Part shown: positions 4,735 through 64,000 of the stretch, piece by piece
Layout of the letters: the number at the start of each line of letters is the position of its first letter
Position numbering within the stretch: the stretch's first letter is position 1
Assembly: GCA_028534125.1 (NCBI GenBank)
Contig: CM052816.1
Location: 101,122,001 to 101,186,000, forward strand
Length of the DNA: 64,000 nucleotides
DNA from: Lama glama
Taxonomy: Eukaryota
Direction: 5' to 3'
Made by a program: the position numbers and the translations under genes
The notes under the pieces: model-generated
Databases searched by the model: none
The model's input: only the letters and a program-made list of their open reading frames with translations
What the model was told of the DNA's origin: nothing

Positions 4735-4935
4735 NNNNNNNNNNNNNNNNNNNNNNNNNNNNNNNNNNNNNNNNNNNNNNNNNNNNNNNNNNNNNNNNNN
4801 NNNNNNNNNNNNNNNNNNNNNNNNNNNNNNNNNNNNNNNNNNNNNNNNNNNNNNNNNNNNNNNNNNNNNNNNNNNNNNNNNNNNNNNNNNNNNNNNNNNN
4901 NNNNNNNNNNNNNNNNNNNNNNNNNNNNNNNNNNN
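4735..4935. other. Assembly gap (~200 N)
   Basis: Run of N. Confidence 0.99.
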
Positions 4936-56348: not shown

Positions 56349-58559
56349 CTTTTAGATTTTTCAATAGATTCCTTTATTTTACCACCGCAAAATTACAACA
56401 CATCCAGGAATTAATCTGGTAAAATGTGAAATCTTTGTGTAGAAAAAAATTTCAAACACTATCAAAGAACTAAAAAGAAGACCTAAATAAATGAGAGAAT
56501 AACTATTGGTGAAAAAACAGTGCTTGAAATTGCAAAGCACCTGTGTGTTCGTATTGACTGCTCTTTTATTTTCTGTATTTCCTGACTCACTGACGTCTTG
56601 GGGCCTTGCTGCCGCTGGAGGGATGCTCTTAGGGTTACTCCTCCGGGAGCGCACCTTCCAGATGCAGACCAGCCAGTCCGGAGCCCACAGCCCAGCCCTC
56701 TCCTCTGTGGGGCACCCACATCGGGGCGCTGAGCCCTGCCTTCACCACTCCAGGCCAGGTCTAGACCACTGGGGACAGCCCTTGACTTCCCCACCCACTC
56801 AGGACCCTCAGCCTCAGCAGTGACTGTCTTCCTCTCCAGCTGTAGTCCCCAACCGACTCCCAGCCCATCCCTTCACCTGACCCAGGATCCTTCAGGACCG
56901 AGATGGGGCCACAACAGCGGTTTCAGCCTCCCCTGCAGGGCTGGCTCTTTGCCTTCACGCCCCAAGCCCCTCCCTAAAGAGCCCTCCTGGCTCCTAACCC
57001 CCTCCCCCATCCTCTATCACACAGCTTCCCAGAAAGAGGCTCTTAAATCTCCCCGTCCACACCACAGCTCACCACGGGCTGGTCTCAACTGCTGATCCCA
57101 CTGCTGAGTGGCCATTCCAGGTTTACCCTGGTCATCCTCCCAAGGAGGTAACTTCAGACTCACCCCCGACTCCCTGGCCCTGCTGTCCACGGACTCGCCC
57201 CTTCTGTGGTCCCTTCTGGGCCACGCTGTCCTGGATGCTTCCACCCTCCTGGGCCACTCAGGTCCCCAGGGCCCTGCGGTTTTGATGAGGTGAGTGTCCT
57301 TCAGTTTGCACCCTCCACCCAGCTTCCTCTCCCGCCGCACAGCCCGTCGCCCAGCCCACCAGCTCTCCCAGCTCGGCTGGCTCGTTTCTGTAGTCAGAGC
57401 AATTGGCAACTGAATGGCTGATGGCTTCGGAGACAAGGGAAATGGGGCCTACTGGAGCTCACCAGCAAATCCCCAGGCTTCTGGGTCATCGCGACACAGG
57501 GGAAGAGGCAGACGCTGCTCTGTTTGTCTGCAGGTGTGACAGCCAAGGTCCCGAGGAGAGGCAACCTGCCCAGGTCAAGCGTAAGGCTTTGAAGAAGTTT
57601 GGACCCTGCCCTGCTCTCTCCCTTCCACACTGACGGTGTGTGTAGGATGCCGCAGACGTCAGCAGGACCATGGCCTCCCTTTGGGTCCCCGGGCTCTCCT
57701 CTCTCCATCGAAACACAGAAGGGCCCTCGGCATGGCGATACTTCACCATGTCGTCCACGAGGGTGCAGGCTGGGTTCTCGGAGGGTCAACCACTCCTGAC
57801 CCACTACCCAGGCAGAACACAGGTGCCCCCCAGGAGCCCAGGGCCTTGGAGAGGTCAGGCAGGCAGCCCCAGAGCACTCCAGAAGAGCTGGGCTCCTCCC
57901 CGCGGTTCCAGGCGTCCACGTGTGACCTGACGGGGCTGCAGCTGTACGCCAGCCTCTCCTCACCCGCCGCCCATGCCAGCTCACGCCTTCCGTCTCCTGC
58001 CTGTCAGGGCCGCAGGGAGAGACGTGCAGAAATGTAGCTGTTCTCACTGCAAAAGGTTTGAGGTGAAGTTTTGAAATTTATAAATTTTGAAGAGGGAGCT
58101 ATTTTGCTTTTGCCCTGGTCAGTGCTGTGCCACAAATAGGGACCCCCAGCACCCCCCTTCACCCACAGGTGTTATTCCATGAACCAGAGTCCTTAGGGAA
58201 TGGGAACAATTCATCACCCGCTTCTCAGACCACTGGGTCCCAGTCTGCACGTGCCGGGGCCCACCATCCGAATGGACCCTGTGGCCCGAGAGGACCTGGA
58301 GAGTCCGGGATGAGGCCTGCCCTCAGGGGCTCCTAGAGCAGCTCACAGCCAGGACTGGCAGGACCACGGAGCAGCGCAGGGGAGCCCTTCTGAGGACAGG
58401 ACAGACGGAAGAAAAGCCGCGGGAGCTGGGTCTGGGGCGGGGACCCAGTGGAACCTCCTGCAGGCCTGTCACACGTGCGGCCTGGCTGGGGCCCGTTCCT
58501 CGTGTGCGTCGGGATTTGGGCAGCTGGGGCGGCCTAGCGCCAGGACTGCCGGGGGGCTC

Positions 58560-59900
58560 CTCACCCACACGCCATGGGAGCGCGTGCCCTCCTGGTCTTC
58601 TGTCCCCGTGTCGCTGACTCTCCCTTCCCCCCACGGCCCCGCCCCCGGGTCCGTACCCTGAGCGGCGGAAGGGGGCGACGTGGCGGGCCGCACTGCGCTG
58701 GGGGCCGGATCTCCCCTTCTCGGGGACCAGGCCCGCTGGCAAAGCCCAGTGGTCCGGCCACAGCAGGAGGCTCTCCGCCAGGGCCTCGGCGCCCCTGGGA
58801 ACGGGTCGGCCTTGGTCCCCGCGAGCTAACCCAGGCGCAGGGCGCGCGGCGGGGGAGCGCGGGGGGTACTGCCTCTCGGGGCCCTGGGGAGGCGGGGCTC
58901 ACGCGGAGCCCCTCCCGAGCCCGCCCCGCCCCGCCCACGTCATGCCGCTGCCCTTCCTGCGCCTGCGCGGCCGGGCTCCCGGCCCGCTCCTGCCGCCGCG
59001 CATCCTCTGCCCGCGCCCGGCTCCCCGCGCCCACCTCCGCGCCCCGCTCGGTCCCCAGCTCCGCACCCCGCTCCGCGCCTGGCCCCGCGCCCCGCGCCCC
59101 TCGCGGCGGGCGGCGCGGCCATGAGGCTGCGGGGACGCGATTCCCGCGCCGCCCCCGCCTCCAGCGCGGGGACCAGCGACGCGCGGCGGCTGGCGCCCCC
59201 GGGGCGGAACCCTTTCGTACACGAGCTGCGCCTCAGCGCCCTGCAGAAGGCCCAGGTGGGTGCCCGCCGTGTGCCCGACACGCCCCGGGCCCGGGGCTGC
59301 GCCGAGGGTCCGGGATGCGCGGCCGGAGGGGGCTGGGAAGGGGACCGCGGGCGCGGCCCAGCCTCGCGGCCCCGGGCCCCAGGACCCGCGATCGCCACAC
59401 TCCCCTGAGGCCCGCAACCCGCATCCTCGCCGCCCTCGCCCCATCCTCCGGTTCCCGCCGCCGGTGCCCCGAACCTGGCTCCGCATCCCCAGTCCCTAGG
59501 TCCCCGCACGCGGCCCTATCCCCCTTTCCCTGATCCCTGGATCCCTGGCCCCTGCACCCCGACCTCAGACCTGCACGCAGGTCGGCCGCGCCCCGCAGCC
59601 CTTGGTCCGGGCTCCCGTTCCCGCTGCGTTCCGGTCCCGCGCGGTACCGGAGCGGCTCCCCCGGATGTGACTTGGTCCCTTGGTGCGCTTGGTGTGTGGG
59701 GACCTCGCTGGTCACGTGAGTCATTGCCAGTGGCAGTGTGGTGCGGACTGTGCGGGGTGCCCTGCCGGTAACTGGCGGGAAGACGTCGGCCTCTGCGTTT
59801 GCGAGTTGTTCCCGGGGCCCGCGTGGGGCTGGGCTTGCGGCCCGACTCGGTCGTGCACAGCCTGGTCCCCCTGGGCAACAGCGTGCGGGCGCGTCTGCTC
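58560..59900 (+). promoter_or_regulatory. LPCAT1: LPCAT1 CpG-island promoter / first exon
   Basis: Very high GC and CpG density around exon 1; tandem GC boxes ccgccccgccccgccc (58921-58936); CACGTCA (58936-58942); NRF1-like TGCGCCTGCGC (58958-58968); no TATA box seen. Confidence 0.9.
59121..59255 (+). CDS. LPCAT1: LPCAT1 coding exon 1 (lysophosphatidylcholine acyltransferase 1)
   Basis: Translates to MRLRGRDSRAAPASSAGTSDARRLAPPGRNPFVHELRLSALQKAQ, closely matching the recalled human N-terminus (MRLRGCGPRAAPASSAGASDARLLAPPGRNPFVHELRLSALQKAQ). Start context gcggccATG; 135 nt ending in a phase-0 donor CAG|gtgggt; lies in a CpG island. Confidence 0.97.
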
Positions 59901-62237
59901 CCCACGTTTAGCCTGTTGAGGGGCCCGGCCCTGGCGGAGGGGTGGCCGCTGCAGGACTTGGGGTCCCCACGCTTGTGCCTTCCCTTCGCGTGGCTCCTGG
60001 CCTGGAGGGACGCTTCCCCGAGCCGGTGGGGCCTGCGAGCTGGCCTTGCGGACTCTGGTGGTGAGCTGGGTTTGCGCTTCTGTAAGTTGCTCTTCTGACT
60101 CCAAAACTGAACGTCGAAGCAGAGAAGTTTCCGGTCTGCAGCGTCTGTCCAGACGGTGGGGACTGTATCTCCGACTGTGACGGAACTCTTCTGGGGGGAG
60201 ATTGACGTGTTTTTTAATGTGTAAGGTCATTCATTTGAAACAATATTGGAGTGAGAAGTCTTGAACTCAGTCTAAAGCTGTCATTTTCCAGATGCCTGAC
60301 TTCCCCTCAGTGCCTTCTTTGGCGCGTTCAGCTGTTGTCGGTGGGAGAAGAAACAGGCAGCGAAGACTGAGGCGAGGGAAGAGCGGATAGGGTGGCGGAC
60401 CTCCTGGGACGCGAAAGGGCAGGGCTGTGCTCCGCTGGTCCCTGTGCGTGTCAGGAGCAGACACCAGCTCCACTCGCCCGTGTGGTCTGCCGGCACCTCG
60501 TCCACTGCCGGGTGCTCTGCCCGGCGTCCGCAGCCCCTTCCTCTGGGCTCCTGAGCAGGTGCGCCCTGTGATCCAGCGGGGCCTTCCTCCCACGGCTCTG
60601 CTGCTTAGAGCCCGCTGGGGTGAGTGCCTCCGGGCTGGGGCCCTGACCCCTCATCCCTGCCCGGGCCTGGCTGGTCACCCGGCCTCCCGCTGTTGTCCCC
60701 CCGTCTGGCCGCTCTCTCCTGGCCACTCTGCAGCTCCCTCGGGCCCGCGGTGAAACAGCACCTCTGAGAGGGGCCCCCTCCACCCTGATGGCCCCCCCTG
60801 AGCTCCCACCACGCCAGGAGCCTCTGGTCCTGCGGGTGCATGGGGGCCAGGTCTGTCCTGGCCAGGACTCTGTGCTCACTGCCCCCAGGGGAGAGGGGTC
60901 CACTGCAGAGAGTCAGCTGGTTGCTGAGAGAATAAACAAGGGGAGGGGACAGACGTCAGCTCCCTCGGGCGGGGTCACGGCGTTGTACGGTTTGGAGCAA
61001 CTCCTGTGGGCTGTTCTTGCCCGAGCGTCGCGAGAATGCAAGAGCGGACCGGGCGGGTGGGTGTCTTCCCCTCCAGCGAGGGAGGGACGCTTTGTGTGTG
61101 TGTGCCTTGTTGCAGCGTTTCAGGGGCCGTTTCAGAATCATCTTGGCATCTTTGTAACCAAGTCCTGCTCCTGTTCCGAGGCCTGCAGTGTGAGGCCAAG
61201 GGTGTGTAGCCTGAATTTACCCTCCACGTTCCAAGCCCCGCTCTGTGGAAACATTTTGCTTTTCACCAAAAACACTCTGCAAAGCGTTTCCCCTTTACGT
61301 ACTGCGTTATGGTAGAGTTTCCGCAGAGTGAACTGGCCAAGCCAAGCAAAGAAAGCTGCCTCCCCAAATCAGTAAGTAGATGGAACCTGCAACGTCTGAG
61401 ACCCCCCAGGGCGCTGAGCTGTGAGCGCAGATGGCCCAGCGAGTGTGCCTGTGTTACCTGCTGGCATTGGCTGTGGGGGAGGGGCTGCCCGTGCCTGGGG
61501 GTGAATGGCTGGTCCGTCCGTCTGTCACTTAACTGCACATTTGGTGAGGAGCTTAAGCATCTCTTTGGAGGGAGAACCACACGTTAAGATCAGAGCAACC
61601 GTGACTGGTAGAAACTTAGTGGCAGATCGCAGGGTGCTTTGTTGGTCTGGGAGTCACGCAGGGGTGTTACGTCACTCCGGCCTTTTGGTACTTCCCGTTG
61701 GAAGCCGTGGTCATGGGCACATCCCCACTTCAGCTCTGTCACTTCCCCGTTTCTGAATTCCCTGTAACCAGTGTCAGTGAGGATTTACTTCCTGGAAAGC
61801 AGCCTGGTTTCCCAGACACTTTGGAACCAAGTCCTTGGAGGCGAGGCCACTGTGTGCACCCCTCCCCCGGCCAGTCCGTAGGGAGGTTTACCAGGAGGGG
61901 TGACTCTAGGGACAGGCCTGTGCAGTGGCCTGCGTGGAGTGGGCGATGTCTTTCTCCGAGTTGTTATCCGAATGCCCGAGTTCTGATAAAAGGACAGCAG
62001 CAAGCACCCCAATGTCTCAGCCTGGGTCTGTGTTAGGGGTGGCGGCCCTGGAGCAGGGCTTCCAGGCTGCTCCCCGAGGGGGTGCCTGATGGTGGCACTG
62101 GTGCATCTGTGCCCAGAGGTCCTGGTGACTCCAGCGTCCTTGCCGCTGGGAGGCAGGGTTGGGGGGGCGCCGTGTCCCCTTACCCAGGTGAGGGGCGCAG
62201 GCCCAGGTGCTGTGCTGACCCCGCACCCCGGGCGGTG

Positions 62238-62737
62238 NNNNNNNNNNNNNNNNNNNNNNNNNNNNNNNNNNNNNNNNNNNNNNNNNNNNNNNNNNNNNNN
62301 NNNNNNNNNNNNNNNNNNNNNNNNNNNNNNNNNNNNNNNNNNNNNNNNNNNNNNNNNNNNNNNNNNNNNNNNNNNNNNNNNNNNNNNNNNNNNNNNNNNN
62401 NNNNNNNNNNNNNNNNNNNNNNNNNNNNNNNNNNNNNNNNNNNNNNNNNNNNNNNNNNNNNNNNNNNNNNNNNNNNNNNNNNNNNNNNNNNNNNNNNNNN
62501 NNNNNNNNNNNNNNNNNNNNNNNNNNNNNNNNNNNNNNNNNNNNNNNNNNNNNNNNNNNNNNNNNNNNNNNNNNNNNNNNNNNNNNNNNNNNNNNNNNNN
62601 NNNNNNNNNNNNNNNNNNNNNNNNNNNNNNNNNNNNNNNNNNNNNNNNNNNNNNNNNNNNNNNNNNNNNNNNNNNNNNNNNNNNNNNNNNNNNNNNNNNN
62701 NNNNNNNNNNNNNNNNNNNNNNNNNNNNNNNNNNNNN
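62238..62737. other. Assembly gap (500 N), probable scaffold join
   Basis: Exactly 500 N; LPCAT1 orientation switches across it. Confidence 0.99.
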
Positions 62738-63381
62738 CCCCACTGTCCCCCCTTTCCCTGGCTGTCCCCTTCCCTGGCTGTACCCACCAGCTGCCCCCCA
62801 CCCCCCGGCTGTCCCCAGGCAGCCCTAGTGCAGACCACACAGGCCCTACAGTGTACTTGTCACTTCCAGCCCCAAGCCCAGGCCACCAGCACCCAAAGGG
62901 CCTCCTCCCTAGGCCTTCTCCCAGTCCCCACTCTCTCCTCATCACCCTCCCTCCACCTCCTGCCTCCGTGGCAGCACCACTGCCTCTTGAACGTCAGCTC
63001 ACACGTTGGCACCTGGACCCCTGTGTGCCTCTTGCAGCCACGCAAGAGGTGGGTCCTGGGTTCCCCTGTCTTCTCTGGGGTCGAAATGTGATGGTGATCA
63101 CTGAGCTGACAGACAGGCGGGAAGAGACGTGCTCAGTTACCTTCCCGCCAGGGCTGAAGACAATTAAGTTAAGTCCCGGAATCCAGGAGTGTGAGAAAGG
63201 CCAGCCTCGTGCTGCAAGAGCTGAATTAGCCTCACGGGGCTGAACCGAGCTGCGGTCCAGCAGCAGCGGGCCACGTGCTCCGCGTCCACATTTGCTACAG
63301 TGATCGGCACGGCAGTCACTCGAGCGGGCCTGCGTTTTCCCGCAGGACAGGACAAATAAGACAGCACGGGGTCTGACTTAC

Positions 63382-63416
63382 GCTCCAGGTCCTTGCCACG
63401 TCCACGTGATGGTGTC
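63382..63416 (-). CDS. LPCAT1: LPCAT1 internal exon (35 nt, equivalent to human exon 7), inverted relative to exon 1
   Basis: Minus strand reads cacctttcttgcccccag|GACACCATCACGTGGACGTGGCAAGGACCTGGAGC|gtaagt = DTITWTWQGPG(A), identical to the recalled LPCAT1 segment ...YPNKL-DTITWTWQGPGA-LEILWL; canonical acceptor and donor. Confidence 0.93.
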
Positions 63417-64000
63417 CTGGGGGCAAGAAAGGTGCGGATGAATCTGGATTGGGAACCCCGCATGTGCCGCGTCCCTCCTCCTCCTGCAGGCGAGCCCGCC
63501 TCGCCCGGCCCTCCACTCAGCCCACCTCGGACCCCAGGGATGCTGGTCTCCCTCATCGCTCATGTCCACTCTGGGGCAGGACAGAAGGCGCATCTCACTG
63601 CCCCCGGGTCCCCCCAGACATGCTCACCTCTCTTCCCACAGCTGCAAGGTCACCAGTTCCAGCGTCCACCTAAGACCCAGTCCCGACCCTTTTCCCACTG
63701 TCCCCCTCCTTCCGGTATGCGTGGCACCTTCAGGCTACGGCACGGGCGCCCGCTTTGTGTGCCTGACTCTCAGACGTGCTCTGCAGGCCTTGCCCTGCCC
63801 GTCACCACCCCCCAGCCTCACGACGCTGTTGGCAGCCTCCTTCCAACTCCACACCCACCTGTGCCCCCAAAGGTCCCCCTGCCCAGACTCTCAGTCAGAG
63901 ACACTGGCAGGTCAGCCCCGGGCTCAGGAGGGGGTGGAAAGAGCACTGCTGGGCCACATCTCCCCCACCACGTGTGTGTCCAGGGCCCCGTGGGGGCATT

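What the first reader, a model, noticed from the sequence alone, without database searches (positions are those of the whole stretch)
59121..64000. LPCAT1 exon 1 (+) and an internal exon (-) face each other across a 500-N gap
Seen: exon 1 is on + at 59121-59255. An intact 35-nt exon encoding DTITWTWQGPGA with canonical splice sites is on - at 63382-63416, only ~4.1 kb away. No exon 2-6 sequence is recognisable between them, and an exactly 500-N gap sits at 62238-62737. Known: this peptide is mid-protein in LPCAT1, and fixed 500-N spacers are used by some Hi-C scaffolders, which often misorient small contigs. Inference: the contig right of the gap is flipped, so annotation would wrongly show LPCAT1 as broken. 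Less likely alternatives are a real intragenic inversion or an inverted partial duplicate, which would matter for a lung-surfactant and retinal gene.
Basis: partly seen in the sequence, partly recalled or inferred. Interest (0 to 1): 0.75.

Follow-up and report, generated by a model that had tools for sequence, protein, structure and literature searches.

The report
LPCAT1 split by scaffold join
The first exon of the lung-surfactant gene LPCAT1 and one of its middle exons do point at each other across an assembly gap, but this is most likely a piece of the assembly put in backwards, not a broken gene.

Summary
LPCAT1 exon 1 lies on + at 59121-59255 in a CpG island. It is 42/45 identical to the pig, warthog and whale models. 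A 35-nt exon with AG and GTAAGT borders lies on - at 63416-63382. It encodes residues 243-254 of the 534-aa models. An exactly 500-N run lies between them. tblastn with six LPCAT1 proteins finds no other LPCAT1 exon in the 64 kb.

The strand switch falls at a gap of the length that 3d-dna and SALSA2 insert by default, and Hi-C scaffolds are prone to local inversions (PMC9292758, PMC7672694). A Camelus ferus gene model chains DNA homologous to 57.2-60.6 kb (+) with LPCAT1 exons 2-14 on one strand. The mini-exon is intact, and no second copy lies in the window. I read it as a misoriented, possibly also misplaced, contig (about 0.78).

This is not proven. The scaffold beyond 64000 could not be read. 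A real inversion or an inverted duplicate stays possible at under 10% each. An earlier scan note places LPCAT1 exon 3 about 5.7 kb past the window end, strand unstated. Interest is low.

The parts
58001..60000 (.). CpG island around the LPCAT1 start (2-kb bin)
   Evidence: GC 0.72, CpG o/e 0.77, the highest in the window
59121..59255 (+). LPCAT1 coding exon 1 (45 codons), donor GTGGGT at 59256
   Evidence: Protein search hits LPCAT1-like dog P0002 (E 2.8e-9), armadillo P0003 and squirrel P0001. tblastn E about 5e-16. 42/45 identity to pig, warthog and whale models.
59256..62237 (+). Start of intron 1, left contig up to the gap; no LPCAT1 exon
   Evidence: Six-frame reading and tblastn. T>A skew of +0.12 to +0.30 in all four 600-nt windows.
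60511..60618 (+). Stretch homologous to a filler 'exon' of the Camelus ferus LPCAT1 model P0162 (residues 36-71); used as a co-linearity marker
   Evidence: tblastn 89% identity, E 2e-18. Further markers lie at 57235-57276 (14/14) and 57687-57770.
62238..62737 (.). Assembly gap, exactly 500 N (not read, not filled)
   Evidence: 500 Ns is the default of 3d-dna and SALSA2 (PMC9292758).
62750..62816 (.). Short C-rich tandem repeats at the very start of the right contig
   Evidence: Period 16 x 2.2 copies and period 18 x 1.9 copies
62738..64000 (-). Right contig (window part): LPCAT1 intron sequence in minus sense around the mini-exon
   Evidence: GC skew -0.19 and -0.24 on +, in the lowest 5% and 1% of 97 upstream windows. 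No similarity to the rest of the window. Held at 0.89-0.95 of sampled words by 14 rows (12 guessed DNA, 2 of unknown kind) of coded organisms A-E.
63382..63416 (-). 35-nt mid-gene LPCAT1 exon (residues 243-254 of the 534-aa models), AG acceptor, GTAAGT donor
   Evidence: (12/12, E 7e-4).

Best explanation
The two exons belong to one ordinary LPCAT1 gene. The contig that begins right of the 500-N join was inserted by the scaffolder in reverse orientation. In the simplest form it carries the exons from about exon 2 or 3 up to the mini-exon. In a variant, it is a small contig that was both flipped and put in the wrong slot. In the animal the gene would run exon 1 to last exon on one strand. Only the assembly, and any annotation built on it, shows it broken. 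Shown here: both exons, their strands, the gap, the lack of other LPCAT1 exons in the window, and the co-linear order in a related species' gene model. Inferred: the flip itself and the extent of the flipped piece.
For: 1. The strand switch coincides with an exactly 500-N run. That is the default spacer of 3d-dna and SALSA2, and that kind of scaffolding is known for inversions, above all of short contigs (PMC9292758; PMC7672694). The window also holds a 201-N run, which points to a second, separate layer of joins.
2. No breakpoint is visible in read sequence. The right contig starts in short C-rich tandem repeats, a usual place for an assembler to stop.
3. The mini-exon is intact: 12/12 residues, with AG and GTAAGT borders. 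The dog model P0002 leaves the family sequence right after ...RYPNKL, which is where the window's acceptor lies.
4. The Camelus ferus model P0162 chains, on one strand of one 444,607-base contig, stretches homologous to window 57235-57276, 57687-57770 and 60511-60618 (+) with LPCAT1 from exon 2 to the end. In that relative, the DNA left of our gap is upstream of the gene body and has the same sense.
5. Four of the five camelid models carry the mini-exon peptide in the normal place, after RYPNRL.
6. GC skew changes sign at the gap, which fits minus-sense transcription of the right piece over a long time.
7. Scan note s1-268351 puts LPCAT1 exon 3 about 5.7 kb past the window end. That is 6.3 kb from the mini-exon, which fits one flipped block holding exon 3 to the mini-exon.
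Against: Nothing read here spans the gap or shows the far end of the right contig. The strand of exon 3 beyond the window is unknown. If it is +, a simple flip of one large contig is wrong, and a small misplaced contig or a duplicate is needed. The C. ferus model comes from another genus and speaks for the ancestral order, not for this animal. T/A skew in the right piece is not reversed (+0.01 and +0.06), so the skew evidence is mixed. None of the 5 camelid LPCAT1 representatives carries exon 1, so no public camelid model seen here shows exon 1 joined to the rest.
Confidence: 0.78

Rival explanations
1. A real intragenic inversion in this animal or lineage. A block of LPCAT1 from inside intron 1 to the intron after the mini-exon is inverted in the genome, which breaks the canonical transcript.
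For: The arrangement as assembled is exactly what an inversion would give. None of the 5 public camelid LPCAT1 representatives includes exon 1. No read evidence against it could be gathered.
Against: The switch falls at a fixed-length scaffolder gap, not in read sequence. The mini-exon and its splice sites are intact. Reduced or lost LPCAT1 causes perinatal respiratory death and retinal degeneration in mice (review PMC4280512, passages), so a fixed break is unlikely. The C. ferus model shows the normal order. Four camelid models have the normal order from exon 2 or 3 to the last exon.
Confidence: 0.08
2. An inverted partial duplicate. A copy of the mini-exon with its flanks sits in intron 1 or 2, and the working copy lies further along on the + strand.
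For: If exon 3, noted 5.7 kb past the window end, is on +, the mini-exon lies upstream of it, as a stray copy would. Only 1.26 kb of the right contig is visible.
Against: The copy is perfect at protein level, with canonical splice sites. There is no second copy or related sequence in the window. An intact exon-sized decoy inside an intron of its own gene is rare. The strand switch at a scaffolder gap is explained more simply.
Confidence: 0.07
3. The right contig belongs to LPCAT1 but is a small piece that is both flipped and put in the wrong slot, while the main gene body runs on + from beyond 64000. This is a sub-form of the assembly-artefact reading; its share is already inside the 0.78 above.
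For: The same as for the best explanation. It becomes the required form if exon 3 at about 69.7 kb is on +.
Against: It needs two errors instead of one. By the settings described in PMC7672694, 3D-DNA ignores contigs under 15 kb, and this form needs a contig under about 7 kb.
Confidence: 0.15

Closest known systems
Local contig misorientation in Hi-C scaffolds (3D-DNA, SALSA2)
   Same: There is a fixed 500-N join, a strand switch exactly at the join, and no breakpoint in read sequence. The literature reports such errors at a few percent of contigs, more for short ones (PMC7672694, PMC9292758; passages read).
   Different: The scaffolder used for this assembly is not known to me. The length of the right contig and the contact map were not seen.
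LPCAT1 (AGPAT9/AYTL2) of other mammals: 14 exons, about 67 kb, 534 aa in human
   Same: Exon 1 and the mini-exon match the family. The human gene figures come from PMC12467284 (passages read). The roles in surfactant and retina come from PMC4280512 (passages read).
   Different: In the assembly the two exons are on opposite strands about 4.1 kb apart. The exons that should lie between them are not in the window.
Disease-type intragenic inversions such as the F8 intron-22 inversion (recalled, not looked up here)
   Same: The first exon or exons are separated from the rest of the gene and face it in the opposite sense.
   Different: Those arise by recombination between inverted repeats that can be seen in sequence. 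No inverted repeat or breakpoint is visible here, only a gap.

Membership tests
LPCAT1 gene | N-terminal exon with the conserved ...PPGRNPFVHELRLSALQKAQ peptide | tested here: met
   (E 1e-13 to 7.5e-9 to LPCAT1-like proteins), and (42/45 identity to five artiodactyl and whale models)
LPCAT1 gene | Mid-protein peptide after ...RYPN(K/R)L, on its own 35-nt exon | tested here: met
   12/12 by tblastn. An exact match occurs in 163 of the 200 proteins fetched. The boundary is supported by the read-through in dog P0002 and by the 30-residue skip in P0162.
LPCAT1 gene | Acyltransferase domain PF01553 and EF-hands | not testable with these tools
   The exons that encode them are not in the window. 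The precomputed Pfam labels belong to the database proteins, not to the window.
Scaffolding misorientation artefact | Strand or order break coincides with a scaffolder-inserted fixed-length gap | tested here: met
   500 N at 62238-62737 between a + exon and a - exon. 500 Ns is the default of 3d-dna and SALSA2.
Scaffolding misorientation artefact | Related or independent assemblies show the normal co-linear order | tested here: inconclusive
   The C. ferus model P0162 links left-flank homologues (+) with exons 2-14 on one strand. That is another genus, and it is a gene model rather than an alignment of assemblies.
Scaffolding misorientation artefact | Reads or contact map of the same animal support the opposite orientation | not testable with these tools
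No stretch may span the N run.
True inversion | Breakpoint junction present in read sequence, often with flanking inverted repeats | tested here: not met
   There is no junction in read letters. The flanks share nothing beyond chance. A breakpoint hidden in the gap cannot be excluded.
Inverted partial duplicate | A second copy of the exon in normal order elsewhere in the gene | not testable with these tools
   There is none in the window. The scaffold beyond 64000 cannot be read here.

The most novel reading that the evidence does not exclude
The inversion is real. In this camelid-like lineage or animal, the block from intron 1 to the mini-exon is inverted, exon 1 is cut off, and LPCAT1 is made from another start. 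That would fit the fact that none of the five public camelid LPCAT1 representatives seen here carries exon 1.
Probability: 0.06. Interest if true: 0.6.

Novelty: not a real feature. Interest (0 to 1): 0.1.

Why it matters
As an artefact it matters only in practice. Any annotation on this assembly will split or truncate LPCAT1, a gene needed for lung surfactant and photoreceptors. Comparative screens could then wrongly call it lost or rearranged in this species. It also marks this 500-N join as one to review in the contact map. If the arrangement were real, it would be a natural disruption of a gene whose reduction or loss kills newborn mice or blinds them, and that would be surprising.

Tried and rejected
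The protein atlas search with exon 1 gave no usable hit. The PDB sequence search with exon 1 gave only chance matches (E 1.1, dihydropyrimidinase-related protein 2), so no solved LPCAT1 chain was found that way.

tblastn for residues 72-141 of P0162 found nothing in the window. That stretch could not be used to place the right contig.

I searched the scan's notes for the strand of exon 3 and for the neighbour SLC6A3. They give positions only (5,740 and 72,490 letters past the window end), no strands.

The camelid 'isoform X1' models that might carry exon 1 did not appear among the 120 rows listed of 1015.

Friedman et al. 2010 (rd11) is not held, so its content is cited only through the review PMC4280512. 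Supplementary files were not consulted; they may hold scaffolding details of camelid assemblies.

Exon 1 was searched alone. The mini-exon (12 residues) is too short for the remote searches and was compared only by local tblastn with stored proteins.

I considered and rejected a chance ORF for the mini-exon. It matches 12/12 with E 7e-4 in 64 kb, and it has both splice signals and the exact boundary seen in other species' models.
Full report
WHAT IS THERE. On the + strand an ATG at 59121 opens a 45-codon exon that ends at 59255 before GTGGGT. It sits in the only strong CpG island of the window: 58001-60000 has GC 0.72 and CpG o/e 0.77. On the minus strand, 63416 down to 63382 is a 35-nt exon. 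A pyrimidine tract and AG precede it, and GTAAGT follows it. It encodes DTITWTWQGPG and the first two bases of an alanine codon. Between the two lies an N run of exactly 500 at 62238-62737. The window has one other N run, 201 long, at 4735-4935.

IDENTITY. I searched exon 1 by itself. To admit candidates of 106-336 aa, I gave the stop-free 192-codon frame around it and scored only the 45 exon residues. The hits were 'lysophosphatidylcholine acyltransferase 1-like' of dog (P0002, E 2.8e-9) and armadillo (P0003, E 7.5e-9), and an unnamed squirrel protein (P0001, E 9.9e-14). Three of the five candidates passed. Two further searches, with P0002 and then with alpaca P0120, brought 200 LPCAT1-family proteins into the session.

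tblastn of six of these proteins against the whole window gave two real hits. Exon 1 matched at E about 5e-16 to 9e-16 with 74-78% identity. The mini-exon matched 12/12 at E 7e-4 to 8e-4. Everything else I could see had E >= 0.016 and was low-complexity noise (the output was cut in the middle, so some rows for three of the six queries were not seen).

Exon 1 is 42/45 identical to the pig, warthog and three whale models. The mini-exon peptide occurs exactly in 163 of the 200 proteins and starts at residue 243 of the 534-aa hippo and warthog models. The exon borders fit other species' models. Dog P0002 runs into unrelated sequence right after ...RYPNKL. Camelus ferus P0162 lacks exactly the 30 residues from DTITW to VEIE, which is 90 nt, or 35 plus 55. 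The exon's ordinal number was not established.

THE GAP. The flanks share no overlap in either orientation (best match 13 nt, E 0.066), and the right piece resembles nothing else in the window. The gap lies in intron and the exons are on opposite strands, so reading frame across it is not at issue. Continuity could not be tested. The right contig begins in short C-rich tandem repeats (62750-62816), a common place for a contig to end.

Base skews differ on the two sides. The left piece has T>A by +0.12 to +0.30 in all four 600-nt windows. The right pieces have GC skew of -0.19 and -0.24 on +, which puts them in the lowest 5% and 1% of 97 upstream windows. Their T/A skew is not reversed. This fits long-standing minus-sense transcription of the right piece, but it is weak, and the rule behind it is recalled, not looked up.

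WHAT BEARS ON ARTEFACT VERSUS REAL.
[quoted passage not shown] Its local orientation error was 4.3% on human short-read contigs, and higher for shorter contigs (PMC7672694, passages).
- The C. ferus model P0162 (629 aa, from a contig of 444,607 bases) begins with filler exons. They map to the window's + strand at 57235-57276 (14/14), 57687-57770 and 60511-60618 (89%). The model then continues with LPCAT1 from exon 2 to the end. Its residues 72-141 are nowhere in the window. A gene model lies on one strand, so in that camel the DNA left of our gap is upstream of the gene body and has the same sense.
- Four of the five camelid representatives carry the mini-exon in its normal place. None of the five carries exon 1. 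Cluster members could not be seen, so that absence is weak.
- Human LPCAT1 has 14 exons over about 67 kb (PMC12467284, passages). Reduced or lost LPCAT1 gives perinatal respiratory death and retinal degeneration in mice (review PMC4280512, passages). A fixed break of the gene would therefore be unexpected.

NEIGHBOURHOOD FROM THE SCAN'S NOTES (unchecked leads). Note s1-268351 places a minisatellite at the LPCAT1 exon 3 donor 5,740 letters past the window end. Note s1-862781 places a site 'downstream of SLC6A3' 72,490 letters past it. Neither states a strand. Exon 3 at 6.3 kb from the mini-exon fits one flipped block holding exon 3 to the mini-exon. If exon 3 is on +, the right contig must instead be a small piece that is flipped and misplaced, or a duplicate.

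READS. Of the 24 rows listed, 20 hold at least part of the right piece. Fourteen rows hold 0.89-0.95 of its sampled words: 12 guessed to be DNA and 2 of unknown kind, from coded organisms A-E. Four RNA or RNA-like rows hold 0.25-0.27. The holders come from 12 studies, and all runs are kept as contigs. So the piece is real DNA of several close relatives, and part of it appears in RNA data. Nothing was laid, and I then worked beside the named places. The 4% or greater difference from C. ferus in the marker stretches, together with the many near-identical holders, suggests a camelid outside Camelus. I did not pursue this further.

VERDICT. The best reading is an assembly artefact at a scaffolder join (0.78). 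Within that, a simple flip of one contig is the likeliest form, and a flipped and misplaced small contig is the lesser form. A true inversion (0.08) and an inverted duplicate (0.07) are not excluded, because nothing read here spans the gap or shows the far end of the right contig. The finding is useful as a flag for assembly review and for anyone calling LPCAT1 broken in this species. It is not a biological novelty.

Noticed in passing
window 57235-57276, 57687-57770, 60511-60618 (+): The public Camelus ferus 'LPCAT1 isoform 1' model (P0162, 629 aa) starts with about 141 residues of non-LPCAT1 filler. Three pieces of that filler map to intergenic and intron-1 DNA of this window. The model skips the true exon 1 and also lacks the mini-exon and the next 55-nt exon.
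   Followed up: partly
public proteins P0104, P0114, P0120, P0123, P0162: None of the five camelid LPCAT1 cluster representatives returned carries the exon-1 peptide, while the pig, warthog, hippo, cattle and whale models do. This is most likely because the very GC-rich exon 1 is poorly assembled or not linked in camelid assemblies. Cluster members were not visible.
   Followed up: partly
window 4735-4935: A second N run is 201 long, a different convention from the 500-N run. Scan notes mention 100-N runs elsewhere in this genome. The assembly seems to carry several layers of joins.
   Followed up: no
window 62750-62816: The right contig begins in two short C-rich tandem repeats (periods 16 and 18, about two copies each).
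   Followed up: yes
window 62738-64000: Four RNA or RNA-like runs hold about a quarter of the sampled words of this mostly intronic piece. That is far more than the 35-nt exon can supply. It could be unspliced LPCAT1 RNA or another transcript.
   Followed up: no
window 1-58000: The 58 kb upstream of LPCAT1 is uniformly GC-rich (mostly 0.55-0.67) with CpG o/e around 0.4-0.65, and it holds no LPCAT1-like exon. I did not look for other genes there.
   Followed up: no
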